A stretch of 64,000 bases of DNA from Macrostomum lignano. Lineage: Eukaryota. The position numbers and the translations under genes are program-made. The number at the start of each line of letters is the position of its first letter. The stretch's first letter is position 1. This document shows positions 26 through 44,361 of this stretch, in pieces. The notes beneath the pieces were generated by a model. That model did not search any database and was not told the origin of the DNA. It was given only the letters and a program-made list of their open reading frames with translations. The stretch is taken from contig NIVC01000665.1 in the NCBI GenBank assembly GCA_002269645.1, forward strand, positions 310,001 through 374,000. Reading direction: 5' to 3'.

Positions 26-3000
26 ACGGCACCATCCGAGCCGTGGCGAGCGTCATCCGCGACCGGGTTGGCGGTGACCAGCTGGCCAGGCAGTTCGGCA
101 GCAGCCTGGGCATCGGGCTCACCCACTGCAGGTTCGCCGGACGGCCCTGCTCGCTGCTCAACTTCCAGACGATGCTCCATCCTCAGCTGGGCGCCTGCCA
201 CTGGTTCAACAAGTCGAACTTTGCCGAGCTTCTGTCCACTAGCAAGGCCACGGATGCTCGTCTGACGTTCAGCTACTTCACGGACTCAACTGACACCTAT
301 GGAAGCCAGTTCGCCAACATGAGCAAGACGGCCGCCATCCTGAACTCGGGGCTGCTGGAGTCAGGCGATGCCGAGAGTGCCATGCGGGTGAGACGGCTGT
401 GGAATATGCGAGCACAATGCCATCGAATTGAGAGTGCATCCTGCACTTACCACATGTAGATAGACTGGGCCTTTTGCTAGCTAATGATACTACTATTCTT
501 CAGGGGTCTGTTCAGAGTTTTTTGCACATACTTATTGCAAAGCGCCATCTCTGAGCTCTCATTGGCCACGAGCTTTGTCTATGGCCAAATCCGACAGATC
601 TTGACGCTTCTTTATTGCATCGATGTAAATTGTACAAATATCGCATATTGCCTGTCCAAAGTCTCAAAATCAAGTTTTATGAAGTCTATTTTAATCTAAT
701 GTCAATCTAATCTAATCTAATCTACGAATCTAATCTCAGTCTAATCTAATATAATCTAATCTAGTCTAATCTAATCTAATCTAATCTAATCTAATCTAAT
801 CTAATCTAATCTAATCTAATCTCATCTAATCTCAGTATAGTCTAATCTAATCTAATCTAATCTCATCAAATGTCAATCTAAGCTCAGTCTAATCTACTAA
901 TATAATCTAATCTAATCTAATCTAATCTAATCTAATCTAATCTAATCTACTAATCTAATCTAATCTAATCTAATCTAATCTATTCTAGTCTCAGTATAGT
1001 CTAATCTAATATAATCAAATCTCATCAAATCTCAATTTAATCTAATCTAATCAAATCTCATCAAATGTCAATCTAATCTAATCCATTTGAACCTCATCTC
1101 ATTCAGGTGGCATTCGTGCCCACAGGCCAGTACCCGCGCCTCTCCGACACGGTGGCGGTGAGCCCCGGCCAGCACGCGGAGCTGAAGCTGCGCTATGACC
1201 GCAGCGTCCGGTACCCGAAGCCCCCCGGCCAGCCGTGCGCCCGGACTCTGCCGGCGGTCAGCTACGCCCTGCCCACCTGGAACACTAGCTGGAAATATGT
1301 TGCTCGACTGCCATGGTGATTGACATGATTCAGCAGCTGTCATAGTGTGCACTATTGCAATAGTTTTGCCTTTAGAACGGTGGAATCTGAGTTTATGACA
1401 ATGACCACATGGTTTTACATAGACACTGCACATAGCAAAATGACTTAAGGTACATAGAGAAATATTAATTTTCAGTAGTTGAAGCAAAACTAAAAGATGT
1501 GAGTCACAAGCTTGAGCAGTCAGTTCTAGATTCTTCTTCTTCTTCTTCATCAGTTCTAGATGTAGACATAGGGCCTGTCTGTGCGCCTACTTTCCAATAT
1601 TTTTCTTCAAGTTTCTTGAAAATTGGTCCGTCGTTCGCGCAGGGACACCTCAATCAACCTGGCCATGCTGTACTCAACACCAAATTGGATTGATAAAATC
1701 GAAATTCTGAAGACGATCTTGGCTGCGAAGGAGACTGGCACGTGAGTGAAAGAAATGATTTTATAGTGAATGAGTTTTTTAGCACTAAAATCACAATATC
1801 TCTCCCCTTCTGGAATTTTGAACTACAAACTGAACAAGTGTCTCTCCTGTCTGATCCCTTAGCTACCTATGACTTAGCTGCAGGGGGGTTCCGGGCATCC
1901 GGATGCAGCGAGGAGGCGTTGGCGCTCATTCCGCTAATCCCTGGCGACCACGGGCAGCTGGTGCTGCGGTGTCGCGCATGAAGATCTGTGGTGCTGGTGC
2001 CAGCAGCGTCGTCCCCCTCCGGAGAGTCCAGGAGGTGGATGTTCGCTCGCCCGGTAGCTCTTAGGTAGCGGACGAGCTGGCAGAGATTCTCGGGCCTGAA
2101 AACGTCAGAAAGGTCCGGGTTTGGGCCGAAGTAGGTGAGCCTGTCCCGTTTAATCCGAGTGGTGACAACAGGGGTGGGGGTTGGGACCTTCGTCGGCACC
2201 TGACGCTTCTGGCCAATGCGTGGAGTCCGATCTGGCATTCGCAGAGTTGCCGGCACCCTACTCAGAGGCGGCAGATGAGGCGGCTTCCGCTTCCGCTGTT
2301 GTTCTGTCGGCTTAATTCCTGGAAGCGAGCGATGCTTTAGACCTTGATACAGGCCTGGATGTGGAGATCGGGCAGACTCAAGGGCACCAGAACAAGTTCC
2401 AGTGCTGCAAAATGTCCACTTGTTCCAGCGCGTTCCAGCAGCATCAAGGGACGCGGTGGTTGTACGTTGGTTACTAAATAGATCGCCAAAAAGTAGATGT
2501 GGGCAAGGTGAGAGACTAATGGGCTGTAAACCCAAGCCCAACTGCCAGCCAAAAATTAGGACCGAGAAACTCCCCGGTTGAGAGCCCAGCTAAAGGTCCA
2601 TCAACGCGGTGCTACACTCGGCCCCTTGAGAGAGACTAGGAGGCTGTCACCGGAGCCTACGGACTGGCCGCATACCCGTTAAGCTCAGAGGTTACCTGCT
2701 CCTCAGAGCCGTTGCTAAAGCTACCTGATGCGCACAGATGCATTTCCGGGTAGAACCAGTTCCCAACACGGCCAAGACAGAGAAGCCGAGACCCCGGATG
2801 GGAGCCCCCAGTCAGTCCAGCAGTCCTAGAGCTGCCTGTAAAAAATGCTCGGCTTTGAGAAAGTTCTCCTACCATTCCTGCACCGGATCGATGGCGGTGC
2901 AGGTGTGTAGCATTGCAAACCTTAACTCGTAAGCCTGGTCTAGGCGTACTGAGCCCACCGTGGGTCAGTTAGTATTTGTTTTCTTTTTTGTTTAACATAG

Positions 3001-4091
3001 CTAAAAAGTTAGCCAAATGATAAACAAATGCTTTGACCTGCATGTACAGAACTGAGCAAAGCGATTGATCTTTAAGATACCTTTGAACTACAAAATTCCC
3101 CAACTCAACCAACATCCTCACGCTCAGCCGTCCCACTGGCGACTCCGTTCGATTCGAATCGGCCACTCAGGAAGACTGCATCTTCGCCTACAAAGTGCGC
3201 CAGTTTCTCAACCAGTGCGGCTGCCTGCCCTCCTTCCTGCCCATCCCAGTGGAGCTGAAGACCAGCGGGCGAGCGTTCTGCTTCGGCGAGCCGGCGGCCA
3301 GCTTCGGAGGCGCCGAGCAGCTGGACAAGTTGGAGCTGTGCGTCAGGGAGCAGATCCGCCTGCAGGCGCGTCACGAGCGGGACGCCAGGCGCTCCGAGTG
3401 TCCGCCACCCTGCGAGACTCGCGCCTACTCGCTGCGCCAGGCCGCCTACCCGTGGCCGGGCCTGACCACCGAGAATGCGCACAGATTCCTCATGGGCAGC
3501 CTGGGCGGCTGGTCCTATCCCTACAACTTCCTGCGGTCTCGTGGCATTGCAAGCCTCTACTATGCCTACCTGAGGTCCTACGACTATTCTGTGCTCAATA
3601 AGAGAGTGTACGATGCCTTCCATATGCAGACCTTTGATCAGGAGGTGCGCATGGTGGAAAGGCGACTAGTCAAGGCCACGGTGCAGGCGGCCAGCGACTT
3701 TGGACAGGATGTCACCGAGGAGCCGTCCTACACCATCAAGAACCTCATGGCAGACCTGGGAGGTGAGTCTGGCTCTGGCGACAAAGTTCCTGGGGGTTCG
3801 AAGCCACATAAATTTGCAGTCTGCTTTTACTTGCTAGATTTATTGTAAACACTCAAAACATTTCAACCCGCTGCCGCAGGCGCCCTCGGCCTCTGGTCGG
3901 GCGTCTCAGTCCTGACCGTGTGCGAGCTGATCGAGCTGGCTGCCCGCATCATCGCTCTCGCCGTCCATCGCCGTTTTCACCGAGGCGTGACGGCGACCTC
4001 GCTGTATCAGCAGTCAGCTGAGGCCAGCAGGCCAGCAGCCAACGAAGATAAAAAAGAGCTTGGCTCTTCGACAGCTGATGAGAGAGTTTAA
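26..4091 (+). CDS. DEG/ENaC (amiloride-sensitive Na+ channel / ASIC superfamily) paralog A, 3' part; the 5' exons lie upstream of the window
   Basis: Exons 26-387, 1107-1315, 3128-3762 and 3880-4091 have GT-AG boundaries and consistent phases (1/0/2/1). They encode HCRFAGRPC...GACHWFN (palm), a Cys-rich thumb (QCGCLP...CPPPCET) and TM2 [26 protein letters not shown], ending in TAA at 4089-4091. Confidence 0.92.
697..1085. repeat. (TCTAA)n pentanucleotide microsatellite in a gene A intron
   Basis: Direct reading of the sequence. Confidence 0.95.
1860..2150 (-). mobile_element. 3' fragment of a non-LTR retrotransposon
   Basis: DRLTYFGPN...[15 protein letters not shown] plus the downstream 3' UTR are shared with 27690-28015. 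Confidence 0.6.
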
Positions 4092-8122: not shown

Positions 8123-11100
8123 ATGTCCGAGAGGAGCAACGAAGCATCTGACGGTAGCGGCCTTCGCAGCTACCTGAATGAGTTCTGCAACTACACCACC
8201 GCCCACGGACTGGGCAGATTCGGGGCCCAGGCCAGCAACTTCGGCAGAACCCTGTGGCTCTGCTTCCTGCTGGGCACCTACGGCGGGTTCACCTACCACA
8301 TGTACACTCTGGGCCTGCAGTTCGCCAGCGTGCCGCTCTCCACCAGCCTGTCCACCTCGCTGCCGTTCGAGTTTCCCGACGTGTACTTCTGTCCCACCGA
8401 CACTGTGACCATGAGCCGAGCCAGTCCTCAGGTGGACATCTTTTCCCTGACCCGGCGGATCACCTGCGACTCCGACTGCAAGCGACAGATGAAGTTCGAC
8501 GTTTTCAGATCGGACGCCGTTCAGTACGGCGTGCCCGCCGTGGAGCTGCTGGATGCGATTACGGCTGTGGAAGAGAACGTGACTGATGCACTGCATTATG
8601 ACAACACCTGTAAGTGTGCATTGAGTAGATAACAGAAGTGCACTCTTTGCCTTTCGGAAGGCCTGGAAGGAGGTCTTCATCGGCAGCGGCAGTGCTCAAG
8701 CCCAAATCATGCACATGAAATAAGATATAATGAAAATACGAAGTAAGAAATAATGGACACGAGGATTCCTGAACCATAGACAACTAAACTCGAAGGACGC
8801 AACACTCGAAAATAGTTCAGAATTCGCTGGAGACTGGTTTTCGCTGCAAATTCGATTTGCAGATTGCAAATGAAGCCAGTGTTGTACGAGGTTCTTGTAG
8901 TTTCTGCTACCGTCCGCAGACGGGGTGATCGGGGTTTCGGGTACTGCATGGACTGTCCAGAGCCTGCCGAGTGTGATAGGAGGGGACCCCTAGGCGCACA
9001 AACACTGCGGGGCGGAAGTGGATGGGCCGGGAGCGTACTGACACTCCTACAATCCTACAAGAGGGAGGTGAGATCCGGGCAAGGGCCGTGCGCGCGCATA
9101 AACACTGCAGCACTCAGTGAAAGCGGGGGCTGGGTGGAGCTAAGCCACGCGGGCTGGGGGAGGGGGCAAAACTCACAGAGTTGAAGGGCGAAAGAGAGAG
9201 AGGGGGAAGCCAATCCAAAGACATGATTGGACTGGCCCAAACCAGAGAGGAACTGAAAGGGGCAGCCAATTTAAGTACAAACTACGAGAAATCTTAAACG
9301 AAAACAAGAATGGCAACTTCAGACAGGGGCAGTCTAGAATGAGCCAGCGGCAGGGAGAGGAGAGGCGGAGAGCGCAAGGGTCGGGCTATAAGGGCATTGT
9401 GAAGCGCAGCTGACAACACAAGTATGAGTTTCATTTGAGACACGTTCGTTGCTGTTTCATCATGCCATCTTGGACAACTTCAGAGATTCGCAGACTGCCT
9501 GAAAAGTCATTTTTTTCAAAAAACTTCCGACTGGTAATTTTCGTCCAGGCTTGTCCCGAACAGTGGGGGAAAGCATCAGGAGTGTTTAGTAGTCCCTGAG
9601 TGCGGGTTTCTGTGTCGGTACACGGGGTTTACGTCAGAACTCGGGACGGGACCTAGTCCGGGGCCTGGCGGTCTTTATTTTTATCAAATTCGACCCCTCT
9701 TCCGTTGCAGTGCCTTTGAACGTGTGCCGAATAACTCCGGGTGGAGAAGAGTACCGCGGCAACCTGTCCCGGGTGCCCGTGTTTGATGCTTCCATCATTG
9801 TTACAAAAATAAAAATGTACTTTCTGTTTTTTTATTATACACATTTCCAGTGGAAAGACCAGCCGCCCCATGTGAGCTACAGCGACTGCATCGGCTGGAA
9901 TGAGGCCGCCAGGGAGCTGCAGGCGGCCGGACTGCACCAGCTGGCTGGCAGAATCCTCGCCGCTGGCTTCGCCGACAGCCACCGAAGCTGCAGGCAGCCG
10001 CCCGGCCTGCCGCTCACCGCCTTCCACAACAATGCGACGCGTGAGTGGCCAAGAAATGGCATTTTAAAAGTTCTACTTGTATCACGGATATGATAATAAA
10101 TAGATTGGTACGTAGTTCAGTTGAAGCATTTTAATGTTCTTTCGGACATGACGGTGCTCCTGAACAGACATAGAGCAACTCAGGCTCACAAAATCCAAGC
10201 CAACGTTTTCCTGCGCACCTTCTCAAAGAAGAACCAAGACGCCAGCCCTTCAGAACGTCGAGATATTCAACGATCCACCCAGACACTTGAATTTTTCCAT
10301 AAGCGCCTGTGCGTATCTCACTGCTGGGTATCCTCAACGAAGTTCACAAGAATTCAGTCATCCCCCAAAGCTTTCGGTGTTTCAGCAGACGACACCAGGT
10401 GACAAAGTTTGAGTATCCGAGTATTAGGCTAACTCGTTGAATATCTCGACGGTCCGGAGGGCTGGTGACTTGATTCTTGCTTAGGAAGGTGCGCAGCAAA
10501 AAGTTGACTCAAGTGTCCTCAAATTTCGTGCGTCTTAGTTCCGTGCGGCGCAGCAATAAAAAGGGCAATTCCTCCTTTGAATGAAAACTCACATTCCTAC
10601 CTTCCAGCTTAACCCCTCCAATCCCAGCCTCACCGCCCAATCTTCATTGTCTGCTTCGGTGTTCCAGCCTCAAGCCTCCTTGCATATTTTTAGTTGTGCT
10701 GTCTGACGTACTCAAAAATTACGTACAGCTTCACTAATATATTTTAGTCTCGCTAAGATATTTACCGGTACTTCTCGTCAACAATAGCTCACGCATTATT
10801 CCTTGCTACTGAATTGAAAGCAGATTTCTGCAACCGGGTGTTCAAATGCAGGTCCGCTGCAAAATTACGTCGGTTGCTGGCCCGCAAGCGACGCACGAGG
10901 CACAGGGCTGCGGCAGCACAAGTGCCTGAGCGGCTTCATGTTTGACCAGCTCCGGCTCGGCCTGTGCGCCGAGTGCTGCTACAACGCTGCCTACAGCTAC
11001 ATGAGCCTGCTGGCTGGCGACACCTGCTACTGCGGCAACGAGCTGCCTGGCAACGACAGCCTCAAGCAGAAGAACTCTGCCTGCGGAGTTCGCTGCCCAG

Positions 11101-14100
11101 GAGATGCTAAGGAGATCTGCGGAGGCGAGAGCGCGCTCAGCGTCTATCTGGTGCGGAGTCCGGGTGAGCGTCACGAGTGCGTTTGTGCAATCAAGGTGCA
11201 GCGCGCCAAATGAAAACGACCTTCCATCGATTAAAATCGTGTCACTCTTTTCAAGACATTTTAAGTTGGAGATTAAGTAGTCCTGCTAAGCTTTCCTGAA
11301 TCATTTCATATTCTGTATGTGCGTGGCATTTATCGCTCATTTGCTAAGGCTGAGCTGCAATTCGCCCTGTCGGCTGTGATGTTAGCTGTCACACCTGAGC
11401 ACCTTACAGCGGCGTATCTAGTCCTACAGAAGACACTTGCGCAATGCACCCTATGCACATGTGATAGTCAATTACAATACGAGCGTAGTTTTTCAATGCA
11501 TTCGATGCTCTGGCATGCGCAGGCATTGATTAACTTTATTATTTCGATTTCTCACCTGCAGACCCCAAGCCTCTGTTCATCCCGTTCAGCCCCGCATTAG
11601 ACAGCCTCAGTGTCGGGCCCTACTGCTTCTACAGGGCCGCTGGGGGCCGCCTGGCTGCCACCTACTGCAATGTGCCTTACTGCCGTGAGCACCGCTGTTT
11701 TTACCTGGGAATTTGTTAATTTTTCAGTCATTACAGTTACAACTTCTCAGTGTATAAAATTAGCAATACAATTACGAGCAATAAGTTTTCAGCAGTATTT
11801 TCAACAATTTTTGTAATCGACTCAACAATCCTTATATTAATAGCATTTCACACAACCGAGGATTGCTGCCCATTCCGCCGACTCCCCTGAGCAGGCAAAC
11901 AAGCGCGCGGCTACGTACGCAGTCATACGCACAGGCAAATACTAACAAAGGAGTGTAAATGGGCCCTAACTTTATTTATCGTTAGGCATGTAAACTTCCC
12001 TGAGCCTTGGGGTTGGTCATTAAGGGCGTTAATTGCACGAGCAGAGCCAAGCCGAGAATTCAATTTAGCCTCGTCGTAGTCGTAGTGTGACTGTACTTGG
12101 GACTTGCATTGTTTTTACTTCATGACTTGTTTTCCGCATTCCCACAGCCATTTCCTCATCTTTCGACTGTCTATCCAGCAGCAACGATGGCTCCATCAGC
12201 GATTCGCAGTACCTTCGCTACACCGGCCACAGGTCCAAGACCAAGACTCGCGACAACTGCCTCAACTGGTCGGATTTAGAAACCACATTTTTAGGCCAGT
12301 GGAATTCTTTCAAATTAAGTTTCAGATTGCTTTCCTACGATGTGAGAATGAGTAAGTTTTTATTGCAAGACGTGTTCAGAAAAAATAATTAGAGTGCCTA
12401 CTTGCAGTGCGCACTAGAAATGTATAAAGTGACTTTAGAAAAACTCTGCGCCACTGGAGGTTTTCTGCAAGAAACCACCGGGAAAAAACAACCTCGTCTA
12501 CAAAAACACAAAAACCAACAACCACCACAATCAGTGCTGGGCGCCGCCGAAGCAGGTCACTTGGGTCAGGTCAGCGTGACGGTTGAGTGCGGCGTTGGTG
12601 ACTCAATCGTCAACTTATTAGCGTTTCAAAGCTGAGATAATAACACTTTACAAGCGGTACACAGTTATGCACCCAGCGGGTCAGGAGTATTTCAATCTAT
12701 TTCAGTTACTCTCCAACTCAACTAAACTCAATGGACAGAAATTTTATTATACAGCAAAGCCACAAAAACTTTACAACTTTCGCAGTTGAAATAAAAAAAG
12801 TGTACGTTGAGACTCCGGACTACAGCTTGTACACGAACAAGACGGGAAACTTCTGCCGGGCTGCCAGAGTGGTTATTGATGCCTTCGTCTATAAGACCGG
12901 CAGATCTGATGGGTACTACTTTATGTAAGTATTGACGGGCGTTCTTGGAGTAGCGCGATTGTCAGTAGAGGTTCCCAATCCAGACTCAACTGTCGTTTTG
13001 AGCACACAGAATCCAGATATGAAGGTCTAAGATCTAAGATCTAGAACTCAAGGACTACTTAACAACTCAGGACGCTACACTCGCGAATGGTAGAAATTCT
13101 AGAAAAGGCCGCTTGCTTTAGCTGTGTCTATGGCAATGAAGCCTTTTCACTAACATTCTTTCATATTCTCAATGCTTGTTCAGACCAGCACTGCTGGTTT
13201 GTAGCAATAATTTGTTTCGTCTAAAATCTTGATAAATAGCAACACTCTTTTTCATCAAAATGCCAATGAAGTGCTGCATCCCTGGATGCAGAAGCAATTA
13301 TAAGAGCGGTGAAAAATGCACTGTTTTTGGCTTTCCAAAGGAAGAAGCTGAAGCTGAGGCATGGCTCCATGCGTTGCCTGTGCAAATTAAGGTAATTTAT
13401 GTAGCCTTTTGAACCTAATTTTTCGTTTCTACTATAAAGATACTTATATTAACTGAATTGTGATGATCATTCCATTCTATCTGTAGAAGGCTAGCATCTA
13501 CATGGGAATCTGCAAAAATCACTGGCCTGAAAATGCACCACTGAAACGAATTAACCGCCATACACGCCCCATCGACCACCCCTCAATCTTTAAAGATTTT
13601 TCATTGACTTCCCTGCGTCAGACTGTCTCAAGTAAGTATGAATGGTTGTGTACTTAGTTTACTTACTAAGTTGTATCAGCCTGTTTCAAATATTTTAGGA
13701 CGCTCTAGAGATGCTGGTCGGCGAGGCGTGCTGTTAGTCGACAGAGCTAGGGCCCCTGATGAATTGACTGCCTTCAATGCTCTCTTTACTACACTTTACT
13801 ACACTTTACTTTACTACATTTGTGGCTACGTTTCACACAAAGAAAATTTGCCTGACCGAGCAATTGCAACAAGTTTGCCTGGTCTGGATACTTCCACTGC
13901 TTGTAGTGAGTTCACCACGCTTGTATCTCGAGGGAAACTGAGCCATCCGCCTGAATGGTTAGTTGTCTTTGCCTGCTTCTGTTATGCCCACTCTATTGGT
14001 TCTGGGCAGCGTTGTGTTAACAGTTCCGTGCTTGTATTTGAGAAAATCTTCGAAATTTTTTTTGATGTTCAACTGGACCGAGATCTGCTGCGTGGAGTGT

Positions 14101-17100
14101 CTCGAAGACTGGCCAACTCCATCTATAAAGGCATGGTGCGCAGAGATTCCGAGACGTCCAGACAATCAACCACCGTTTGCTCTCGCCGACTCCGCAAACT
14201 GAAGCCTAGCTGAATGTTTCTTTCAAACACCTGTATATTTTCAAACTTTGTTATAGCCATCTGTTTTCCTTATACAGTTATGTACGGAGTTTTCCGGTTC
14301 GTTGCATATCGTACTTTTCAATTGTCATTTACAATTCTTATGCTGGGAATATTTGCATATATTTATTGTTTGTATAACTGTAAAAATAATTATTATAGCG
14401 CAAAACTTTTATAATTATCTATCACTTAGTACTTGCTTCTTTATCCAAAAGGCTTATTAAAAAACCATAGACACAGCTAAAGCAAGCGGCCTTTTCTAGA
14501 ATTTCTACCATTCGCGAGTGTAGCGTCCTGAGTTGTTAAGTAGTCCTTGCTAGAACTAAGATCTAGATCTAAGATCTGGTCTAAGATCTAGAACTAGAAA
14601 TTCGAACAGGAAGCAGAGCTCTGTCACCAGCAATTTTCTTTACAACATTTAAGGCCATTAAATTTTCTTTAAGTAAGACCTTGCCCGAGTAAGTCTAAAG
14701 AGACAAAATTGCGAATCTGCTTGCTTAGATTAGTTGAATTTTCCACACTCCATACCAATAATAATAATAAATTGAATCCGCGTTAATGGGCAGATGTGCA
14801 ACCAACAGCTCAGCCGCAGCTATTGCCGGCGAATCTGAAGGCTGCATGCGGCTGTTGAGTCCAAGGACTGGAGGGTCGCCACACACACCCTTAATTACCC
14901 CTGCTGTTGGCTACTATTTTACAGCTGGGTGAACTGAAGCAATGCAGAGTTAAATTTCCTGCTCAATGACACCAATTATTTCGAATCTGTAGAGAATCGA
15001 TCTCCCGACCGTTCAGTCGTGAAACCGACGCTTTAACCACTAGGCTAGGACGCCCCTATTACATTCAATACATTTCTTAATTTTATACCAATATTTAATA
15101 GCTTTACATGTCTTTTTTGCTTCATTGGATGCACGAGACTTCATTATTTTAAAAAATTGCGAAAGTCACAAGTTCCCCACACACCCAGCCGTCACCAGAT
15201 TGTCAAATCCGATACTCCTGTCTGCTTCGTCATGATCAACCAGAGAAGTGCGATCCTGGGCGCCTGCAGAGTGGACGCCTGCTGTGAGTGACTTTATTGA
15301 TTTAATTTGCTAGAAAGGCGGGATTCCATTCAAGGTTGATCGATACAAGTCTTTTCAAGCCAATTCAAGGTCGTTACAAGCCTTTAAATCTTCATGAATT
15401 TAGTGAGTATTCAGTAAGGCGCTGGGCACTGCCGCAAATCAAGGAGACAGCCAGAGTGAAGGCAAGCATTCATGACCGTACCCCGTGACCCCTGAGCACG
15501 CACACGCTCACACAGGGTGCACAGCAGCCCTGACTGTCTAATCGTCTCGCAGTATTAACAATCTGTTCCTTGGGGTTGGCTCACGGAATCAAATCTGGGT
15601 ACTCTGGCGCGAGAGTCAGACACGGTACTGAGCTACTGAACTACTGAGCCCCAAAGCTCATGGCTAGGTTCAAAGCCTTATTCAATTTCGTGATTGATTC
15701 GAACTGATCCTGAGACGCTGCCGCAACCAAAATCTCTTACGCCAGCCCGAGTGACGCAGAGCATCCCCGGCCTGGTGCGGGACCAGGTGGGCAACGCCCT
15801 GCTGGCCAGCCGGTTCGGCAGCAGCATCGGCATCGGCTTCACTGGCTGCTCTTTCGGCAACCAGGCCTGTACAATGGAGGACTTCACCACCCTGCTGCAC
15901 CCGGAGCTCGGACTGTGCCACCGGTTCAACCAGGAAAAGTTCGTCGGGCTCACCAAAGATCTCAAGGCCACGGAATCGTTGCTGTCTTTTAATTACTTCA
16001 CCGACTCTACAGACTCCAAGGGCCGGCGGCTGCCCGGTCTGAGCCGGATGGCCAAAGTGATTTTTCCCGGACTGGTCGACGCGAATGACGACACGCTGAG
16101 CGCCATGAAGGCAAGAACTTTGTCCCAAAACTTGCGGCAAACTTGCGTAAGCCGCTTAAATAGTACTGCCTGAATAGAGATATAAAAATATTGTAAGAGC
16201 CGAGAATTTAGAGTCAACTCACGAAGTATATTTGGCATGCACGATAACTGGGGAGCGATTATAATAGTCCGCGATAGAAAGGTTATAAAAGGACTCACCC
16301 AACTGGGGTGGTGGCATGCACAGAGTAAAGCGAGATGCAAGTGTTGTAACCCGGGTCGGTTTGGGTGCCCAGTCCCGAGTACAATATATATTATACGTAA
16401 GATACAGGCGTAGTGACGCTCTGTCTGTACTTTTATGGATACGAGCAGGCGTGCGACGCTCTGCGATAATAGTTCGATCCCTCTGGTGTTGTGACACTCA
16501 GAGTTCACGCTGCGGCTCGGGGTGTGGTGACACTCTCGAGTGCTTCTAGTCTCAATACTTTAGGTTGTACACACTATATAGAGTAGACGGTACAATACTA
16601 CAAAAAGCTATATGATCTCCCGGCGTTATGACGCTCTGGCAAGAACTCGGCCTAACAAGCTCCCAGAAAAGAACGAACTCAAGCAGCAGGCGGCTTACCA
16701 GTGGCCAAATCGCCGTTACGTTTATTGATTCGCTCGTGCAGGTTCTAACTTCCAAGATTCTTCTCAAGGCTCTTCTGTTTCTTTTCTCGTATTCAATAGC
16801 TAGAATTGCTGTTTAACGGTCTAGTCTCGCACTTGTACTCTCCGAGCACACCAATTCAAAACACAAAACAGCACGAACAGAACAAACAGAACAAACAGAG
16901 CAAACAGAGCAAACCGAGCGAAGGGCGTGAGCAAGGCCCAGAGCCGCATTAAATAATAATCAAACCCTGGGGCAGATGGCCCCACCGGCTAAGCCCAACC
17001 AAACAAGCTACCCCAACAAAATAGAGACTGACCGCGCCGGCCAGCCAATCAAAACCCCGCCTAGGGGGGAGGGGCCGCACCCGCGCCAAAGCTGGCCCGG

Positions 17101-18864
17101 CCGCAGCCAACCAGCCCTGAGCACGGGGCAGGGGCACGGCTGGGGAGGGGCAAGCGCAAAGCCCGGCCGGCGGCCAGACCCTGCCACGCCCGCCAACCCC
17201 CCCCCCCCAACCAGACCCAAAGTGCAACGCGCCCTGCCAACTGACAGAGCAGCCCCACCCCAACTCCACAAATCAAACGCAACCTCACAATATTAACGAA
17301 CTAGACTAGAAATGGTGGGCAGGGCGCTCATGACTCAGAAAATGGAGTATAGAGCGAGAAAAAACGTTTCCGCAATAGCAAGTAACTACAACAGGGGCTT
17401 ATGGTTTGTTCCAGACCAGTTACTTCCAATTGAAATGAATAATGGCAGCCCGAAACCCTCCAGGTGATTCTGGTTCCTAAGGGCCAGTTTCCCTGGCGAG
17501 AAAACGCCATCACCGCCAGCCCGGGCCAGCACCTGCAGCTGAACATTCGCTTCGACAAGCTGAACAGGTATTCGAAGCCTCCAACGCAGGAGTGCCGTCC
17601 GCCCGCGGGGCCCACAGTCTACCGGATTCCCTCGTGGCGCACCAGCTGGAACTACTCAAGTCCTGAGTTGTGAGCTTGAATTTTCTGTTTAGCATTGCAC
17701 AGCCTTTGAACTGACAAGCAGAGCAAAAACGTCTTGAATTAAAATCTCCAGAGATTCATTCAATATGACGACTACAATTTCCTCACTGAACTGGTCAGCA
17801 AAGCTCCAGACTTTACGAGACCGGCTGAGGACTGTAAATAGCAGCATGTAAGTTCCTCTCTTGCAGGGCATTGCTGCTCTCAGCTTTCGCTTTGCCCTTT
17901 TCTGCTTAAACTTATTCCATTGCGACTTGCAGCAGTCCGATGAGCGAAAACTTGACATTCGAGATGCAAGATCAGCGCGACTGCGTCAACCTGTATGCGG
18001 TGAAGAAGTTCATCGAACACTGCGGCTGTCTGCCCTCGTTTCTTCCTGTTCCGGTGCAGCTCTTCCAGAACTACACCTACTGCTTCAACCAGACAGACAT
18101 GGAGAGCATCAAGAGGATGGAGAAGTGTTACACAGAGCGAATGAGCTCAATATCGCGTTACGAAATGGAAGCCCGCCAGGTCTGCCTAACGATGTGCAAC
18201 ACTCACTTCTACACTTTCCGACCCATCACCTACCCGTGGCCCGGCCTGACCATCGAGACAGCGGTGGACTTCATGCAGAACAGCCAAGGGGACTGGTCCT
18301 ACCCCTACAACTTCCTGTTCTCCAAAGGCATCGCGAATCTGTTCTACCTGGACATCCGGAGTAGCGAAATGTACAACCGCTCAACGATGCTCTCGGCCTC
18401 TGAGCTGCTCGATTTTAGAAACAAGCTGGAAGTTTTGCAGGAGAGCCTGGTCAAGGTGTCAATCAAGCCGGTCAGCGACTTCGGACAGGAGATGACGGAA
18501 GAGCCTTCTTACACCATCAAGAATCTGCTGGCCGACCTTGGCGGTGAGCATTTCAAAGCTACCGTGTTATGCTGTCATTTGCAGTTCCGAACAATGGCTA
18601 ATATGTAAGCATTTTTTAGGCGCTCTCGGTCTCTGGTCCGGCATCTCAGTTCTCACCGCGTGTGAGCTGATTGAGCTGCTGGTCTACCTGGTGGCAGCGA
18701 CTCGACGTACAGAGCAGCCCGCCCAGCCGCCAGGGCCTGCGACTGGCAACGCTGAGCAGCAAGACAGCGGCGAGATGAAAGCTGACGACTCAGCCACTCA
18801 GGTTGAAATGACAGACAAAATGACAGACATTGCAGCACCTGAGGTCTCCATCTCGGTTCATTGA
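8123..18864 (+). CDS. DEG/ENaC paralog B with an extracellular Kringle(WSC)-Kringle insertion, about 1038 aa (1021 aa if 9800-9850 is an intron)
   Basis: Exons 8123-8609, 9711-10040, 10852-11163, 11562-11684, 12148-12351, 12786-12924, 15189-15283, 15746-16110, 17464-17669, 17933-18543 and 18620-18864 total 3117 nt and all phases join. N-terminal TTAHG (HG motif), TM1, FPDVYFC, palm GCSFGNQAC...GLCHRFN, thumb HCGCLP, and TM2 [26 protein letters not shown]. Confidence 0.9.
9711..10040 (+). other. Kringle 1, N-terminal half (gene B exon 2)
   Basis: CRITPGGEEYRGNLS...DCIGWNE...HRSCRQPPG matches kringle C1-x-G-x-x-YRG, C2-x-x-W and C3-R-N-P. Confidence 0.8.
10852..11163 (+). other. WSC domain (gene B exon 3, 312 nt, phase 1-1)
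   Basis: YVGCW...LCAECCYNAAYSYMSLLAGDTCYCGN...ACGVRCPGDAKEICGGESALSVY matches the WSC consensus (GC...CxxxC...CxCGN...CxxxCxGDxxxxCGG...xVY). Confidence 0.9.
11562..11684 (+). other. Kringle 1, C-terminal half (gene B exon 4)
   Basis: GPYCFYRAAGGRLAATYCNVPYC matches the kringle GPWCY...YCxIPxC motif (C4-C6). The exon is absent from the ORF track in this frame. Confidence 0.82.
11850..12100 (-). mobile_element. SINE family 1, partial copy
   Basis: Shares ctgcccattccgccgactcccctgagcagg...gttaggcatgta...gcacgagcagagccaagccgag with 7119-7464. Confidence 0.75.
13049..14549 (+). mobile_element. Internally deleted P-element-family (THAP9-like) DNA transposon in an intron of gene B
   Basis: Perfect TIRs of about 85 bp (CAAGGACTACTTAAC... 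/ ...GTTAAGTAGTCCTTG), an exact 8-bp TSD CTAGAACT (13041-13048 and 14550-14557), CA...TG termini, and internal THAP and P-transposase C-terminal motifs. Confidence 0.9.
13260..14213 (+). CDS. THAP domain fused to a P-element transposase C-terminal region (263 aa, no catalytic core)
   Basis: Exons 13260-13391, 13487-13631 and 13699-14213 total 792 nt and are in frame. MPMKCCIPGCRSNY...VFGFPK...WLHAL...ICKNHW...HPSIF is a THAP C2CH signature. LYYICGYVSHK and SRGKLSHPP resemble the P/THAP9 C-terminal YIxGY and RGGLxxPS motifs. Confidence 0.75.
14757..15056 (-). mobile_element. SINE family 2 copy
   Basis: Reverse-complement match to 5800-6108, with an (ATA)n tail. Confidence 0.75.
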
Positions 18865-22725: not shown

Positions 22726-25700
22726 TTAAACACAATCGGAAATCGAGACTGGGTTCTCGTGCTCACTCTGCCGGGGTGCGCCGTTCTCTGACACTCGGGT
22801 GTGACCGAGCTTCTGCTGCAGAGCGATGGCCAGGTACACCAACAGCTCTATCAGCTCGCATGCCGTCAGGACCGACACCCCCGACCACAGACCGAGAGCA
22901 CCTGGTGGATGGGGAACAGATGATGTCAATTTTTCCCCAGCCCTTGCATCAGAGCAAGTCACAGCCTAAAATTTTTAACCAAGCACAGATGAGCTCGGCT
23001 ACAGACACGTGCACACTGCGCCCTGGGGTCGTCCTTACGTGAATCGAAATTTTCGTGTACCAGACATTGGCATGGGAGTCTAAAGCGTAAACAACTGAGC
23101 CAAAACAGCCGGTCTAGTTATTGAGACATGAATATTTTGGAATACCGTGACTGACTGACACAATTTGACTTCTATCAATTTGACTGCCGATAACATTTGA
23201 CTACCGACGATTTAGGTCAGGTCTAGGGTTAGAATTGGGGTCAGCAGTCAACTCGCTGCAGTCAATTGTCGTAGACTCATCCATTGTAAGGAGCTGAGTC
23301 ACTTGATCTCTATTTGCCCATACATTTCCCAAACTAAATCTATACCAGGTGGCTTGTTGCAACTCTTCTGACTTACCGCCTAAATCAGCCAATAGGTTCT
23401 TGCTTGTGTACGAAGGCTCCTCCTTGATCTCCTGACCGTACAGACTCGAAGCCTGCACAGTAACTCTGACAAAGTTTTTTTCAATCAGACTGAGATTTTC
23501 TGTGAGCTCCTTGACGGCCGTTGCCTTGTTAATACTGCCGTCTACAGAGGTGTCCATCTGGCTCACCAGTCTGGAGAAATAGTGCAGTCCAAATAGAGTT
23601 GAAATCCCCTCGGAGCCGAGAAAGTTGTTCGGATAATTCCAATCGAAGAGGTGGCTCTGGAAGAAATCGTGAGCATTCAGCGTGGATATCTCTGGCCACC
23701 GATAGCTGGCCAGCTTCACAGAGTAGCTGCGAGTTTCGCACAGGGGGACGCAGGCTTGGCGAGCGCTTTTCTGCAGTGAGGCCAGCTGTTCAATGTGGCT
23801 CTGGTAGCACTGCTCCACTGAGCCAATGCCCTCTAGCGAGGTCACATTGAAGCACTGTTTGACCTCGGGCGGGAATGCGCCCACTCGGACAGGCAGGAAC
23901 AGCGGGAGGCAGCTGCAGTTCTCAAGGAATCGGCGCGCAACGAACTCGTCTATGCAGTCGTCCACAGTGCTGGCTGCGAATCGCATGGTCGGGCTGATTG
24001 CCGATCTGAAACCGGTTAAAGATTGGCTCAGTAATGAAAAATTCCAGGACATTTTTGGTTATAAATTTTTCTGAAATCGATCACATAGATTCGTATAGGA
24101 CTAGTATATAGGACTAGCAAGCAGCGAAAATTCTTTACTTTTGACACAAGATCGACCTAAATTTGCGATGCTTAACAAATCTCTCGATCGATTTTTGTTG
24201 ACAACCGTTTGATTTTAGCTAGCAAAAGTAGCTGAATTAATATGCAAAGGGGATGTCAACTTAAGCACCAGAATGGAGCCCGAAGTTCAGCTCCGGCCCA
24301 AACCGACTGCAATCGATAACTTGTCGGGCCAGACGACTAGAATCGCCGAGACATCCCATCCGGCTCCCTTCCTTGGGGTCCCAGGGGATAAAGGGGATAA
24401 AATGGCGATTCTAGTCGTCTGGGCCGACAAGTTATCGATTGCAGTCGGTTTGGGCCGGAGCTGAACTTCGGGCTTCATTCTGGTGCTTAAGTTGACATCC
24501 CCTTTGTTTTTTAGAGTTTCTTTACAGCTATAGGGCGAGTATTTCAGTAGCTAAGTGAAAGCTCTAATATTTTAGAAGTCTACTTTTCAAAGACGCACCT
24601 TCCGTTGGTTTGTCCTTCGAGCATTTCACGAAGCAGATCCGTCCTCTCCATCCAATCGGAGGCTGATTGAAATGCTGTATAGTTCACATTCTCTCTGTAA
24701 TTCGTTTTGTAGCATTTCTGGAGTAATCCTTTGGAAGTAGTTGAAAAATAGATATTGGCAGGAGGGCTGCAAGCCCCGACGTGGCACAACTCTATCGACG
24801 AATTGTACAGCCAGCGGGGAGGCAATTCTGCCATTCGCCAATACTGTACGCATAGGGTGTACACCCGCCCTGACTCTAATCGTCAGGTATGTGCACTATC
24901 TGTGGCCTGAACTTGATGACTGAGAGCAGGGGGCCGTAGCCCAGCGGTCTAGCGCAGGTTCTGGTGTGCCAGCGACCCAGGCTCGATTCCAAGTGCAGTC
25001 ACATTAATTTGGGGCTGAATTGGAATCTCGGCTTGGCTCTGCTCGTGCAATTAACGGCTTTGACAGCCAACCCCCCAAGGCGCAGTGAAGTGTACATGCC
25101 TAACGATAATATAAAGTTAGGGCCGCTGTACACTCCTGTGTGAGTGTGTGCCTGCGTACGTATCCGCGCGCTTGTATGCCTGCTCAGGGGAGTCGGCGGA
25201 ATGGGCAGTAATGCCTCTCGCCGGTTGTGTGCCTATGTCGCTTAAAGTGCGCCAGGGTGCACAAAATCCCCTGCCTCTAATAAAAAAAAGATGATCGAGA
25301 GCAATGGGCACCGCAGCTCACCTTCTATTCTTATCAAACAGCCGAAGCGAGGACTTCCAATTCGGCAGAACGTATTCCACAGGCTGGGCCGAGGCAGCGC
25401 ATTCTTTACCGGTCAGCTTCGAGTATCGAACGGTTCGATCGTATCGGATCATGAGCCTCATGTGCTGGCCAGGACCCACGGTGACTGTGTCTTGAGGCCT
25501 GGGATATTGCCCCGGTGGCACTATAATCACCTGTAGATATAGAAATAGTTGTGCTATTGACTGGATTTTACTGGGGATTGAGCTTAATAATGTCAGGTTT
25601 CTTGCATGCAGCAGTAGTCTTTCTATTATTGCTTTCATTTCAGCTCACTTGTCCCAACGGGTCAACAAAGAAGTAAAAGAAAATTAAAATGACCCGCAAT

Positions 25701-28700
25701 TTATTCATTTTGAATAGTCCTTGATAAAAATGACCTGACTACATCCTGGGTTATATCGAAGATAAATGTGTTTAAAAGTTTTTTTGAATTTTACTGACCT
25801 TCATCGCTACTTTCTCGTCAGCTTCCAGTGCCCAGTGCGAAAGCGCGTTAGTCAGGAGTTTCGTGCCAGCGAACTGGCGGCCGCGACTGTCCGTCGCATC
25901 CGTGAAGTAGTTAATCACGAGTTCTGTGTCGTCGACATTAGAAGATTCTGAGTTAATTAACCTGGCTCCGCCCTGATTGAACCGATGGCAGACGCCCAGA
26001 TTCGGATGATGCAGTGTTGTGAAGTTTTCCATGCGGCAGCGGCGACGACCGAGGCGGCAACCGCTGAGTCCGATGCCCAGGTTGCTGCCGAACCTGCTGA
26101 GTAGCAGCTCGGCTCCAACTCGGCTCATTACAACAGAATACTGACAGCCGAGAACATTGTCTGCATAAATAGTTTTTAATGGAACATTAAGTCTGAAAGC
26201 TATCTGAGCCCAACCTAAACTCACTACGGAGAATGTCTTAGGCTACCTTAGAATTTCCTAAATCGAAGTCTTCCTGCCTAAAAGTGCAAGAAACTGCTAA
26301 AAGCGCATTTTTAGCTAAGAGACGATAGAGAGCAGAAATGGGAGACAAGAGAGGAGAGGAGAAGAGATGAGACGAGAGAGAGAGGGGAGAGAGAATATGG
26401 GAGAGAGAAACGAGAAGAGAGTGGAGAGATTAGAGAGGAGAGATGAGAGATCGTTTCAAAAGCCCCAAATTATAATGTTGTACACCGATCCGAATCCAAT
26501 GTACTTTTATTTTCAGTCGTTGCCCCAGCGTTTAATTTATTTGTCTGTGTCACAAGCAGCTACCGACTGACTCTATTAAGGCTTGCCTCGACTTATATCG
26601 TTCTAAACAAAATATAAATGCAACTTAAGCCACGCTCTTCGGCTCAACGCAGTGTCAACGCATAAAACGCAACATTCAATTTATCACGAATTTACTCTAA
26701 GCTTTTTTACCTCTATCCTAACTTAACGACTACTAGACACTAAGTGTTCGTAGTAGTCCTTGTTCTAACTACTCGTATTCACAAGTTTTTGTCGTAGCAT
26801 GGCTTCAGATTTAAGGTACAAAGAAAAACAAAACATTTGTTGTGCAATCGTGCCCTTTCTCGCCCTCCTGCCCCGCCCCAACCCTCCAGTCTGCCCCACC
26901 CCTCCAATCAATAATCAATGCGTACGCCGATCACGCCACCCCGCCCCACCTCCCCTGCTGTACCGTACATTTGTTCTTAAGGTATATTCATGTACGCGTA
27001 GGACCAATGAAAAATATATAGTCGCTGTCTGGAGGGCAGACTCCTCCCTTGCGCGCGTTGGTCCGCCTCCGTTGGCTATTGACTAAAACGACTCGTCGAT
27101 CTACCATAAAAAGTGCACGGCGAACTGCATCGGCTACGGTGTGTAAGTTCGTGTTCGCGATTTACTGTCCTTTTTCTGCTTCTCCCTAGGGCGCGGGACG
27201 GGAGCTCTGACTGGGGACCTGGGGGTCGCAGCTTCCCGACAGGTTAAAGCTGTAGGCGTTGCTCCGGAGGACGGGGCTCACAACACATTAGAAATAGTAG
27301 AAATACTTTAGAAATAGTTCCGGGGATTGAAATTCAAGCGGGTAAAATACCCGAGGGTTTCAACAGCTTGTCTTTTATAAGATCCCGGGTTTACGCTCTG
27401 TCCCGCTAAAAAAGCAATGGCAGCTGCTGACTGGCCTTGCAGCAACCCTCCTGGCTTACAGCAGAGCGGAATGCTGCAGTGTCCGATGCGGGCCTCGCCA
27501 GACTTTGCATAGGCGCAAGCAGCGCTGGAGAACTCGTGGATCTTGCGGCTGAAATGAAAAAATACAACTTCTGCTTAACGATATTTAACAGATGCACGGT
27601 GGGGATCGACTCCCTCGTTAGGCCGGTTCGATTCTGTGTGGGTGTTAGCAAAGCCGTGGTTGCACAAAGCCAGCCGTGATCCTGCCTCCCCGGTGTTGAG
27701 AATGCGGAGCACTTCATCTGTGAATGCCCGTTCTTTACTCAGGACAGGCTCACCTACTTCGGCCCAAACTCGTACCCTTGGAAATTTTCAGGCCCGAGAA
27801 TCTCTGCCAGCTCGTCCGCTACCTAAGGGCTATCAAGCGAGCGACCACCCCCTCCTGGACTCTCCGAAGGGGGACCACGCTGCTGTCACCGGCACCTCCG
27901 GATCTCCCTGCGCGACACCGCAGCACGAGCTGCCCGTGGTCCCCAGGGGTTAGCGTAATGGGCGTCGACGCCTCCCCGCTGCATCCAGATGCCCGCAGCC
28001 ACCTGCGCCTGAGTCAAGTCCAACAACCATTCTCTAAGTTTTTATTAGAGGCAGGGGGCTTTGTGCACCATAACACACTTTAGGCGACATTGTCACACAA
28101 CCGGCAAGAGATTACTGCCATTCCGCCGACTCCCCTGAGCAGGCACACAAGCGTGTGGATACGTACGCAGTCATACGCACAGGCACACACTCACACAGGA
28201 GTGTACAGTGGCCCAGACTTTATTTATCGTTAGGCATGTACACTTCACTGTGCTTTGGGGGTCGGCCCTCAAGGGCGTCAATTGCAGGAGCAGACCCGAG
28301 CTAAGATTTCAGTTAAGTCCCAGATAAATGTGAAATTTGAAATCGAGCCTGGGCTATAGAATTTGTATAGACATGAATACGCCGAATAAAAAAATCAACT
28401 TTCACCTTTCAACTTTCAACTATCACCCATCGATCGAAATGAGTTTGGCTGAAGCTGCAACCATTTTCTACATTGTTGTTTGACCCAAAACTTGTCTGGA
28501 CAGGGTCCTGAGATTTGCTGTCTTTTTTAATATAGTCTGTGGACTGTACCATAGTTTGGAAGACTTTGAAATCACATGTAAGAGTACATTCCCGACTCGC
28601 ATGTAAGAGTACACCCCCGACTCACATGTAAGAGTACACTCCCCGACTCACATGTAAGAGTACACTCCCGACTCGCATGTAAGAGTACACTCCCCGACTC

Positions 28701-35498: not shown

Positions 35499-35634
35499 CT
35501 GTTCCATCAGTTATTTACTGCTGTTCGGTAGGCGCTCTCAATGAACCGAGATGGAGACCTCAGCTGCTGCAATGTCTGTCATTTTGTCTGTCATTTCAAC
35601 CTGAGTGGCTGAGTCGTCAGCTTTCATCTCGCCG
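35499..35634 (-). pseudogene. Orphan inverted copy of the DEG/ENaC gene B 3' end
   Basis: GEMKADDSATQVEMTDKMTDIAAAEVSISVH* plus UTR, near-identical to 18768-18903. Confidence 0.85.
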
Positions 35635-36135
35635 ACATCTCGACAACCGGCAGCTCGTTCTGTTGGAAAGATTTGCGATCGGGCAATGCAGACTGAGTTG
35701 TTCTGTATCACGACAGCGCCAGTGCTCAGACCGTGGCACACATTAATTAATAAAAAGCTAACTAATAAACAAGCAGACCTGTCTCATTTTTCAGCAAGCC
35801 TTCATTGCCAACAAAATTTCAACAATCAGTTCGACAAAGCCTGCATTGGCTGGGTTGATTTATTATTTATTAATTTCTTAAGAATTTAGCGCCATAGAAA
35901 AGCAAAAACAAACATATCGCTTGGTTGCGGATGATTCACAGTAGTAAGGCTCTGCTAACCAAACAAGCAGCACTGCGAACAGAGAGCAACTCTTGGACCG
36001 CACTAATTGACAACAACAAGAACAGTTCAAGTCGGCATAAAATAAATCCAAATCGCTAACTCGGAGCGGCGCGGTCAAGCCGGCTATTCGGGATAAACAG
36101 ATGAAGCATCAGTTTGCACAGATACAGATAGAGAA

Positions 36136-43600: not shown

Positions 43601-43671
<71 letters not shown>

Positions 43672-44135: not shown

Positions 44136-44188
<53 letters not shown>

Positions 44189-44191
44189 GTG

Positions 44192-44222
<31 letters not shown>

Positions 44223-44233
44223 GTCTATCTGTG

Positions 44234-44266
<33 letters not shown>

Positions 44267-44305
44267 GTGTGTCTGTCTGTCTGTCTGTCTGTGTGTCTGT
44301 CTGTG

Positions 44306-44340
<35 letters not shown>

Positions 44341-44361
44341 GTGTCTGTCTGTCTATCTGTG

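What the first reader, a model, noticed from the sequence alone, without database searches (positions are those of the whole stretch)
8123..18864. DEG/ENaC ion channel with a Kringle-WSC-Kringle cassette in its ligand-sensing finger region
Seen in sequence: between the post-TM1 FPDVYFC segment and the palm motif GCSFGNQAC...GLCHRFN, gene B has six extra exons (1203 nt, about 400 aa) encoding two six-Cys kringle patterns and a WSC domain. Gene C repeats the cassette with the same intron phases, so it is conserved rather than an artefact. Established: this is the hypervariable finger region that holds the ENaC protease-sensitive inhibitory tract and the FaNaC peptide-binding site. Kringles are protein/lysine-binding modules. 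WSC domains occur in fungal wall-stress sensors, polycystin-1 and Kremen, where kringle plus WSC bind Dickkopf. Inference: these are trimeric channels with a built-in receptor module, possibly gated by a protein or glycan ligand, by protease engagement, or by tethering to matrix or mucus. I know of no characterised DEG/ENaC with this architecture, but cannot confirm novelty without a search.
Basis: partly seen in the sequence, partly recalled or inferred. Interest (0 to 1): 0.95.

Follow-up and report, generated by a model that had tools for sequence, protein, structure and literature searches.

The report
Flatworm sodium channel with kringle/WSC insert
Two neighbouring genes of the flatworm Macrostomum lignano encode DEG/ENaC-type sodium channel subunits whose outer "finger" carries a ~380-residue cysteine-rich module (two kringle-like domains, one split by a WSC domain). 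This is a real, lineage-specific and so far undescribed way of attaching a binding module to this kind of channel; what it does is untested.

Summary
Gene B (8123-18864, +) splices into an intact 1046-aa DEG/ENaC subunit (Pfam ASC 1.6e-40). Seven exons (1131 nt, 377 aa, 22 Cys) lie between the post-TM1 FPDVYFC strand and the GCSFGNQAC...CHRFN motif. Gene C (31564-22726, -) has the same exons and phases.

The WSC domain passes Pfam's threshold. Both kringles fall below it, but profile comparisons support them (K2 family profile against PDB: only kringles at the top, 1e-6 to 1e-5; hhalign against canonical kringles about 94% for both).

One refinement: the order is not K-WSC-K. The WSC exon sits inside kringle 1, between Cys3 and Cys4.

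The window is Macrostomum lignano. At least eight paralogues carry the cassette, and three are ORFs of RNA-seq-derived transcripts. An exhaustive HMM search of 1.84 billion representatives found whole-cassette matches only in this species. No paper describes the architecture, although uncharacterised database entries exist.

Function is inferred, not shown. The most likely reading is a built-in matrix-, glycan- or protein-binding arm on the gating-relevant finger. The canonical kringle lysine-binding residues are absent.

Verdict: new variant of a known kind, moderately high interest.

The parts
8123..18864 (+). Gene B: DEG/ENaC subunit, 13 exons, 1046 aa (1070 aa if the 72-nt segment 9779-9850 is retained)
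   Evidence: Spliced ORF is intact, with GT-AG introns except one GC donor. Pfam ASC 1.6e-40. 98%-identical public fragments P0002 and P0020 have the same junctions.
8123..8609 (+). Exon 1: N-terminus with HG motif (TTAHGLGRF), TM1, FPDVYFC strand and the first finger segment. Ends in phase 1.
   Evidence: Alignment to FaNaC/ASIC5 TM1 and the beta1 strand.
9711..10040 (+). Kringle 1, N-terminal half (Cys1-Cys3: CRITPGGEEYRG...DCIGW...SCRQPPG). Contains a probable 72-nt in-frame intron at 9779-9850.
   Evidence: (P0020 junction NLSRVP|WKDQ). hhalign to canonical kringles 93.9%.
10852..11163 (+). WSC domain on a single phase 1-1 exon (312 nt, 10 Cys), inserted between Cys3 and Cys4 of kringle 1
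   Evidence: Pfam WSC 3.7e-11, above cutoff. phmmer to yeast Wsc1 7pz2, 7.6e-6. Foldseek of the paralogue model to 7pz2, E 9e-4, TM 0.56.
11562..11684 (+). Kringle 1, C-terminal half (Cys4-Cys6: GPYCFY...YCNVPYC), phase 1-1 exon
   Evidence: Pfam Kringle profile positions 58-79 match the gene C equivalent. Aligns to Kremen and plasminogen kringle C-termini.
12148..15283 (+). Kringle 2 (about 138 aa, long loops) on three exons: 12148-12351, 12786-12924 and 15189-15283. The 2.3-kb intron holds a THAP/TIR transposon.
   Evidence: K2 family profile against PDB: top ~39 hits are all kringles (HGF 1.3e-6, tPA K2 3e-5, ROR1 5e-5). hhalign 94.9%. Junctions match P0002.
15746..16110 (+). Exon 9: distal finger helix plus GCSFGNQAC...GLCHRFN (beta-ball/palm). 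GC donor at 16111, or an in-frame GT donor at 16147.
17464..18864 (+). Exons 10-13 (17464-17669, 17752-17847, 17933-18543, 18620-18864): palm, Cys-rich thumb, TM2 with the GIS (GxS) filter, C-terminal tail
   Evidence: (TM2 aligned to FaNaC, ASIC5 and ENaC).
22726..31564 (-). Gene C: paralogue, 12 exons, 1044 aa, 44% identical to gene B. Same cassette (exons 30155-29853, 29777-29463, 29392-29267, 29183-28986, 28894-28753, 27548-27460) and same phases.
   Evidence: P0007 (A0A1I8HZ70) confirms the junctions.
37..4082 (+). Gene A: third DEG/ENaC paralogue, cut by the window start at the exon homologous to gene B exon 9. Whether it has the cassette is unknown.
   Evidence: tblastn.

Best explanation
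Shown:
- Genes B and C belong to a Macrostomum lignano-specific DEG/ENaC subfamily with at least 8 paralogues.
- The finger domain of each subunit carries a ~377-aa, 22-Cys module: a divergent kringle whose Cys3-Cys4 loop holds a complete WSC domain, followed by a second, loop-expanded kringle.
- The whole cassette is bounded by phase-1 introns. The WSC exon and both kringle-1 exons are each phase 1-1, which is the classic signature of exon shuffling into a phase-1 intron of an ancestral channel gene. Gene duplication then spread the arrangement.
- Channel hallmarks are intact: HG motif, FPxVxxC, Cys-rich thumb, GxS filter in TM2.

Inferred:
- The product still assembles as a trimeric Na+ channel.
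- The three cassettes project from the upper outer corners, where finger-thumb movement is coupled to the gate in FaNaC, ASIC and ENaC.
- They act as built-in binding arms that couple an extracellular macromolecule to gating.

My ranking of the coupled partner:
- Matrix, mucus or glycan tether, giving mechano- or contact-sensing: about 0.35.
- Soluble protein or peptide ligand, Kremen-like: about 0.25.
- Ligand-independent role in assembly, trafficking or autoinhibition: about 0.25.
- No gating role: about 0.15.

The confidence of 0.75 applies to the shown architecture and its origin, not to any single functional reading.
For: - Intact spliced ORFs with identical phases in B and C.
- Junctions reproduced by independent public models.
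- Paralogues P0001, P0152 and P0156 are BOX15 models, and that annotation was derived from RNA-seq transcript assemblies.
- Pfam ASC and WSC are above their cutoffs.
- Kringle homology is supported.
- All 22 Cys are conserved across paralogues that share only 30-55% identity.
- WSC fold match to yeast Wsc1 and to Kremen.
- Position in the finger and the gating role of that corner (PMC11026163).
- The same K1-N | WSC exon boundary is found at an unlinked paralogous locus.
Against: - There are no functional, expression or junction-read data for genes B and C themselves.
- Kringles are below the Pfam gathering score.
- The K1 profile is not significant against PDB (0.63).
- AlphaFold models are poor (pLDDT 40 and 58), so neither the kringle folds nor the nested topology is structurally confirmed.
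- The lysine-binding residues are absent.
- Other domain-fused DEG/ENaCs (C. elegans EGAS) and tested M. lignano DEG/ENaCs gave no currents in oocytes, so channel activity cannot be assumed.
- One paralogue (P0156) has a degenerate WSC.
Confidence: 0.75

Rival explanations
1. Annotation or assembly artefact: the kringle/WSC exons belong to a separate gene nested in a long intron of the channel gene, or they are normally skipped. Exon 1 to exon 9 is in frame and would give a 669-aa conventional channel.
For: Skipping is frame-compatible. I could not inspect RNA-seq reads for this locus. The introns are large and loaded with transposons.
Against: The same arrangement occurs in at least 8 paralogues at different loci. 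Three full-length RNA-seq-derived transcripts join the cassette and the channel in one ORF. There is no start codon, signal peptide or stop within the cassette, and the phases are conserved. Alternative skipping as a minor isoform is not excluded.
Confidence: 0.07
2. The cassette genes are no longer ion channels. The DEG/ENaC scaffold serves as a trimeric membrane anchor for an adhesion or receptor module, or the genes are decaying duplicates in a recently polyploid genome.
For: No currents have been reported for the EGF-fused EGAS channels. None have been reported for the three M. lignano DEG/ENaCs tested by others, whose identity is not linked to this family. The genome is highly duplicated.
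Against: The ORFs are intact. The HG motif, GxS filter, TM2 LGLWSG(I/V)SVLT.CELIE and the thumb cysteines are conserved across paralogues at 33-56% identity. That pattern argues for selection on the pore.
Confidence: 0.15
3. The 'kringles' are not kringles but unrelated Cys-rich spacers. Only the WSC is a genuine module.
For: Pfam Kringle scores are 16-18 bits against a 34.3 cutoff. The K1 profile against PDB is not significant. The AF2/Foldseek run returned no kringle hit.
Against: The K2 family profile retrieves only kringles at the top of PDB, with collinear N- and C-terminal matches. hhalign gives 94-95% to canonical kringles with Cys2-Cys6 in register. UniProt names one paralogue's K2 a 'Kringle domain-containing protein'.
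Confidence: 0.1

Closest known systems
ENaC alpha/gamma subunits (GRIP domain in the finger)
   Same: Same superfamily. A lineage-specific extra domain is inserted among the finger helices at the outer corner of the trimer, and it controls gating.
   Different: The GRIP domain is a small beta-sheet domain with furin-excised inhibitory tracts. Here the insert is a 377-aa disulfide-rich kringle/WSC module. No conserved cleavage motif was noted by eye, and no systematic search for one was run.
[quoted passage not shown]
   Same: DEG/ENaC subunits fused to shuffled extracellular modules. Function is unknown, and no currents were seen in oocytes.
   Different: Different module type (EGF). From memory, the EGF repeats are not inside the finger; I did not check this here.
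Kremen1/2 (Kringle-WSC-CUB Dickkopf co-receptor; PDB 5fws)
   Same: The only well-studied animal protein that combines kringle and WSC. It gives weak sequence and fold matches to the cassette.
   Different: Kremen has a linear KR-WSC-CUB layout and a single-pass anchor. Here the WSC is nested inside kringle 1, a second kringle follows, there is no CUB, and the host is a channel.
FaNaC (FMRFamide-gated channel)
   Same: Best PDB sequence match of the channel core (7yvb, 2.5e-14). The ligand pocket is formed by finger helices alpha1-alpha3, the same region that hosts the cassette.
   Different: The FaNaC finger is about 60 aa of helices. There is no evidence of peptide gating here.
Yeast Wsc1 cell-wall mechanosensor (PDB 7pz2)
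   Same: Best sequence and fold match of the WSC domain (7.6e-6; Foldseek 9e-4). It is a precedent for WSC acting as the head of a force or glycan sensor.
   Different: It is a fungal single-pass sensor that signals through Rho/PKC. It is not a channel.

Membership tests
DEG/ENaC (Pfam ASC, PF00858) | ASC profile match above the gathering score | tested here: met
   140 bits against 23.6 for gene B and 141 bits for gene C.
DEG/ENaC (Pfam ASC, PF00858) | Two TM helices flanking a large Cys-rich ectodomain; HG motif before TM1; FPxVTxC after TM1; GxS filter in TM2 | tested here: met
   TTAHGLGRF, FPDVYFC and LGLWSGISVLTACELIE are read directly and align to FaNaC, ASIC5 and ENaC.
DEG/ENaC (Pfam ASC, PF00858) | Trimeric amiloride-sensitive Na+ conductance | not testable with these tools
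   Needs electrophysiology.
WSC domain (PF01822) | Profile match above the gathering score, with the Cys framework | tested here: met
   43.5 bits (B), 35.2 (C) and 39.1 (P0001) against 27.8. Yeast Wsc1 7pz2 at 7.6e-6.
WSC domain (PF01822) | WSC fold | tested here: met
   Foldseek of the AF2 model of the P0001 cassette: 7pz2 at E 9e-4 and TM 0.56, with Kremen next. The model is of moderate confidence only in this region.
Kringle (PF00051) | Pfam profile match above the gathering score | tested here: not met
   16.5-18.9 bits against 34.3. Only partial matches, to profile positions 8-35 or 58-79.
Kringle (PF00051) | Significant, specific similarity to solved kringles using family profiles | tested here: met
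   K2: HGF 1.3e-6, tPA K2 3e-5, ROR1 5e-5; all of the top ~39 hits are kringles; hhalign 94.9%. K1: hhalign 93.9% but hmmsearch against PDB is not significant, so K1 is weaker.
Kringle (PF00051) | Six Cys forming 1-6, 2-4 and 3-5 disulfides in a triple-loop fold | tested here: inconclusive
   The six-Cys pattern is conserved in all paralogues. Connectivity and fold were not resolved because the AF2 models have pLDDT 40 and 58.
Kringle (PF00051) | Lysine-binding site (Asp55/Asp57 in NPDxD), which defines only the lysine-binding subclass | tested here: not met
   CRQPPGLPL (K1) and CRAARVVID (K2) align to CRNPDxD. The WSC is inserted in exactly this loop of K1.
Kremen family | Linear Kringle-WSC-CUB ectodomain on a single-pass protein | tested here: not met
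   No CUB hit in Pfam, the WSC is nested in K1, and the host is a two-TM channel.

The most novel reading that the evidence does not exclude
The kringle[WSC]-kringle arm is the actual gate-controlling sensor. Binding or pulling by an extracellular macromolecule (matrix, mucus glycan or a secreted protein) on the three finger-borne arms opens or closes the pore. That would be a DEG/ENaC gating modality with a covalently built-in receptor or tether, rather than separate accessory proteins as in the MEC-4 complex. The WSC-inside-kringle nesting would also be a new composite fold.
Probability: 0.25. Interest if true: 0.85.

Novelty: new variant of a known kind. Interest (0 to 1): 0.6.

Why it matters
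DEG/ENaC channels are gated by very different stimuli (protons, peptides, proteases, force), all acting through the variable finger/thumb corner. How extracellular tethers or macromolecular ligands couple to that corner is still debated.

A subfamily that has fused a recognisable binding module into the finger would be a natural experiment on that coupling. Macrostomum lignano has transgenesis (PMC5730564); from memory it also has RNAi and in situ methods. The question is therefore directly testable.

The locus is also a clean example of phase-1-1 exon shuffling into an ion-channel gene, and of one shuffled module (WSC) inserted inside another (kringle).

Tried and rejected
1. The first gene model split 9711-10040 at 9772|9851 and missed exon 17752-17847. 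I corrected it using P0001, P0020 and gene C.
I worked around this with per-exon translations plus database paralogues. Three alignments (A3-A5) had misplaced fragment ends and were discarded.
3. The word-indexed homologue search was very insensitive for this family, returning 1, 2 and 5 hits. Its silence about other taxa therefore carries little weight.
4. AlphaFold with 3 effective sequences gave pLDDT 40 and was unusable. With 10 rows it gave 57.9. Foldseek then recovered only the WSC and Kremen; the RNA-polymerase beta hits are noise from long hairpins.
5. The K1 profile against PDB was not significant.
6. Literature searches for degenerin + kringle, ASC + WSC, and the Mlig gene identifiers found nothing.
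7. dN/dS between B and C was not attempted, because divergence at about 44% amino-acid identity saturates synonymous sites.
Full report
**Observation**

The + strand between 8123 and 18864 contains a series of stop-free, GC-rich segments flanked by canonical splice signals.

Splicing them gives an intact ORF. The exons are 8123-8609, 9711-9778, 9851-10040, 10852-11163, 11562-11684, 12148-12351, 12786-12924, 15189-15283, 15746-16110, 17464-17669, 17752-17847, 17933-18543 and 18620-18864. The product is 1046 aa.

An independent public model of a near-identical copy (P0020) removes 72 nt (9779-9850), giving seven exons, 1131 nt and 377 aa with 22 cysteines.

My remaining cassette junctions are identical to those in P0002, a 365-aa UniProt fragment that is 98% identical to gene B.

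One donor (16111) is GC. An in-frame GT donor 36 nt downstream is an alternative.

**Gene C and gene A**

tblastn with the gene B exons finds a second complete copy on the - strand and a third copy cut by the window start.

Gene C (31564-22726) splices into 12 exons and 1044 aa. Every intron phase equals that of gene B. P0007 confirms its junctions.

B and C are 44% identical overall and 40% identical in the cassette. All cassette cysteines are conserved.

**What the domains are**

- **Channel core.** Pfam gives ASC 1.6e-40 for B and 6e-41 for C.
- **WSC.** Pfam gives 3.7e-11 for B and 1.4e-8 for C, both above the gathering score. The WSC also matches yeast Wsc1 (7pz2) at 7.6e-6 by sequence.
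- **Kringle by Pfam.** Only partial, sub-threshold matches (0.011 and 0.0044).
- **Kringle 2.** A profile built from eight paralogues retrieves only kringle proteins at the top of the PDB: HGF 1.3e-6, tPA K2 3e-5, ROR1 5e-5, then ROR2, prothrombin, plasminogen, apo(a) and Kremen. The N- and C-terminal matches are collinear.
- **Kringle 1.** Its Cys1-Cys3 are in exon 9711-10040 and its Cys4-Cys6 (GPYCFY...YCNVPYC) are in exon 11562-11684. The complete WSC exon lies between them. With the WSC removed, the K1 family profile aligns to canonical kringles at 93.9%, E 1.6e-7, with Cys2-Cys6 in register. The gap falls exactly at the CRNPD...PWC loop. K1 aligns to K2 at 60%, E 9e-5. Against PDB the K1 profile is not significant (0.63).

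The architecture is therefore kringle[WSC]-kringle. The WSC replaces the loop that carries the lysine-binding aspartates in plasminogen-type kringles, and those aspartates are absent from both kringles.

**Structure prediction**

Structure prediction was of limited help. It gave pLDDT 40 with three sequences and 57.9 with ten rows.

Foldseek of the better model returns yeast Wsc1 (E 9e-4, TM 0.56) and then Kremen. That supports the WSC fold. The kringle folds and the nesting remain structurally unconfirmed.

**Where the cassette sits**

With the cassette removed, FPDVYFC aligns to FaNaC YPSVTIC and to ASIC5 FPAVTFC. TGCSFGNQAC...CHRFN aligns to FaNaC HCRFNREEC...CFTFN and to the ASIC5 equivalent.

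So the cassette lies within the finger, between a first helical segment and the helix that precedes the conserved C.F....C strand.

The FaNaC structure paper describes this external corner as the FMRFamide pocket. It also describes it as the site of ENaC protease and ion modulation, and as coupled to the thumb and the gate (PMC11026163).

**Origin and distribution**

The window is Macrostomum lignano.

An HMM of the cassette was run against 1.84 billion cluster representatives. Whole-cassette, single-stretch matches were found only in M. lignano proteins: P0001, P0002, P0006/P0152, P0008, P0010 and P0011/P0156. P0129 is a further partial match in two stretches (profile positions 54-215). These proteins carry ASC by Pfam, and all but the degenerate P0011 carry WSC.

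The other roughly 2800 hits are WSC-repeat proteins, and they crowd the visible top 150. Weak cassette-bearing channels in other taxa therefore cannot be strictly excluded.

P0001, P0152 and P0156 are BOX15 models. That GenBank annotation was built from RNA-seq-based, genome-guided transcript assemblies (PMC5730564). Cassette and channel therefore lie in one transcript in at least three paralogues.

P0001 lies at an unlinked locus with the same K1-N | WSC exon boundaries.

All cassette boundaries are phase 1, and the WSC exon and both K1 exons are each 1-1. This is the expected footprint of exon shuffling. It also means the whole cassette could be skipped in frame.

**Mechanism**

Shown: the architecture, its conservation, and intact channel motifs (HG, GxS, thumb cysteines).

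Inferred: a trimeric Na+ channel with three disulfide-rich arms on the gating-relevant corner.

I rank a matrix or glycan tether first (about 0.35). WSC domains head the yeast wall mechanosensor, and the best matches of this WSC are to that protein. A Kremen-like protein-ligand receptor is second (about 0.25). A ligand-independent structural or regulatory role is third (about 0.25).

Lysine-dependent or plasmin-like binding has no support.

**Comparison with what is known**

The nearest precedents are:
- the ENaC GRIP insertion (same site, different fold);
- C. elegans EGAS channels, described as 'EGF plus ASC' and silent in oocytes (PMC10424705);
- Kremen, which combines kringle and WSC but in a linear layout, with a CUB domain and without a channel.

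Three M. lignano DEG/ENaCs tested by others gave no peptide responses, and kringle or WSC domains are not mentioned in the passages I read (PMC9234716).

No paper combining these domains with DEG/ENaC was found. The proteins exist only as uncharacterised database entries.

**Verdict**

It is a new variant of a known kind. It is lineage-restricted and functionally untested, but it sits in a tractable model organism.

Noticed in passing
window 13049-14549 (inside the gene B intron 12925-15188): A 1.5-kb element with perfect 85-nt terminal inverted repeats (13049-13133 / 14465-14549). It encloses a THAP-domain ORF (13236-13409, Pfam THAP 6.6e-7) and a further 191-aa ORF. It looks like a recent DNA-transposon insertion.
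   Followed up: partly
window 28572-28776 (- strand, 3' end of gene C exon 6 and start of its intron): A 25/51/76-nt minisatellite (about 8 copies, 91-95% matches) begins inside the last ~17 nt of the exon. It repeats the exon end plus its GT (sometimes GC) donor, creating a ladder of potential alternative donors.
   Followed up: no
window 16111 and 16147: The paralogue-like end of gene B exon 9 uses a GC donor (AAG|gcaaga). A strong GT donor (TGC|gtaagc) 36 nt downstream is in frame and would add 12 aa (ARTLSQNLRQTC). Gene C uses GT at the homologous site.
   Followed up: partly
window 9779-9850: An AT-rich 72-nt in-frame segment inside the kringle-1 N-half exon of gene B. It is spliced out in the public model P0020. 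It is absent as an intron from gene C and P0001, where the exon is continuous. It may be a recently gained intron or an insertion.
   Followed up: partly
window 35541-35642 (- strand): An orphan copy of the last 34 codons of gene B (91% amino-acid identity) with no other channel exons nearby. It is a duplication remnant.
   Followed up: no
window ~37400-45800 (- strand): Exons of an ECM29 proteasome-adaptor homologue: ECM29_N 5e-30 at 45140-45754, and HEAT_ECM29 at 38843-39637 and 37491-38435. They are interleaved with many 22-44-nt minisatellites and a (TCTG)~250 array at 44088-45085.
   Followed up: partly
window 62914-63492 (+): An ORF with a flavin-monooxygenase-like match (FMO-like, 8e-12). 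It is probably an exon of a neighbouring gene.
   Followed up: no
window 48000-57000: A block with GC of only 27-37%, against about 45-60% elsewhere. No ORF of 150 aa or more was listed there.
   Followed up: no
P0156 / P0011 (paralogue, not in the window): The WSC of this paralogue has lost several cysteines and no longer hits Pfam WSC, while both kringle frameworks are kept. The WSC may be dispensable in some family members.
   Followed up: no
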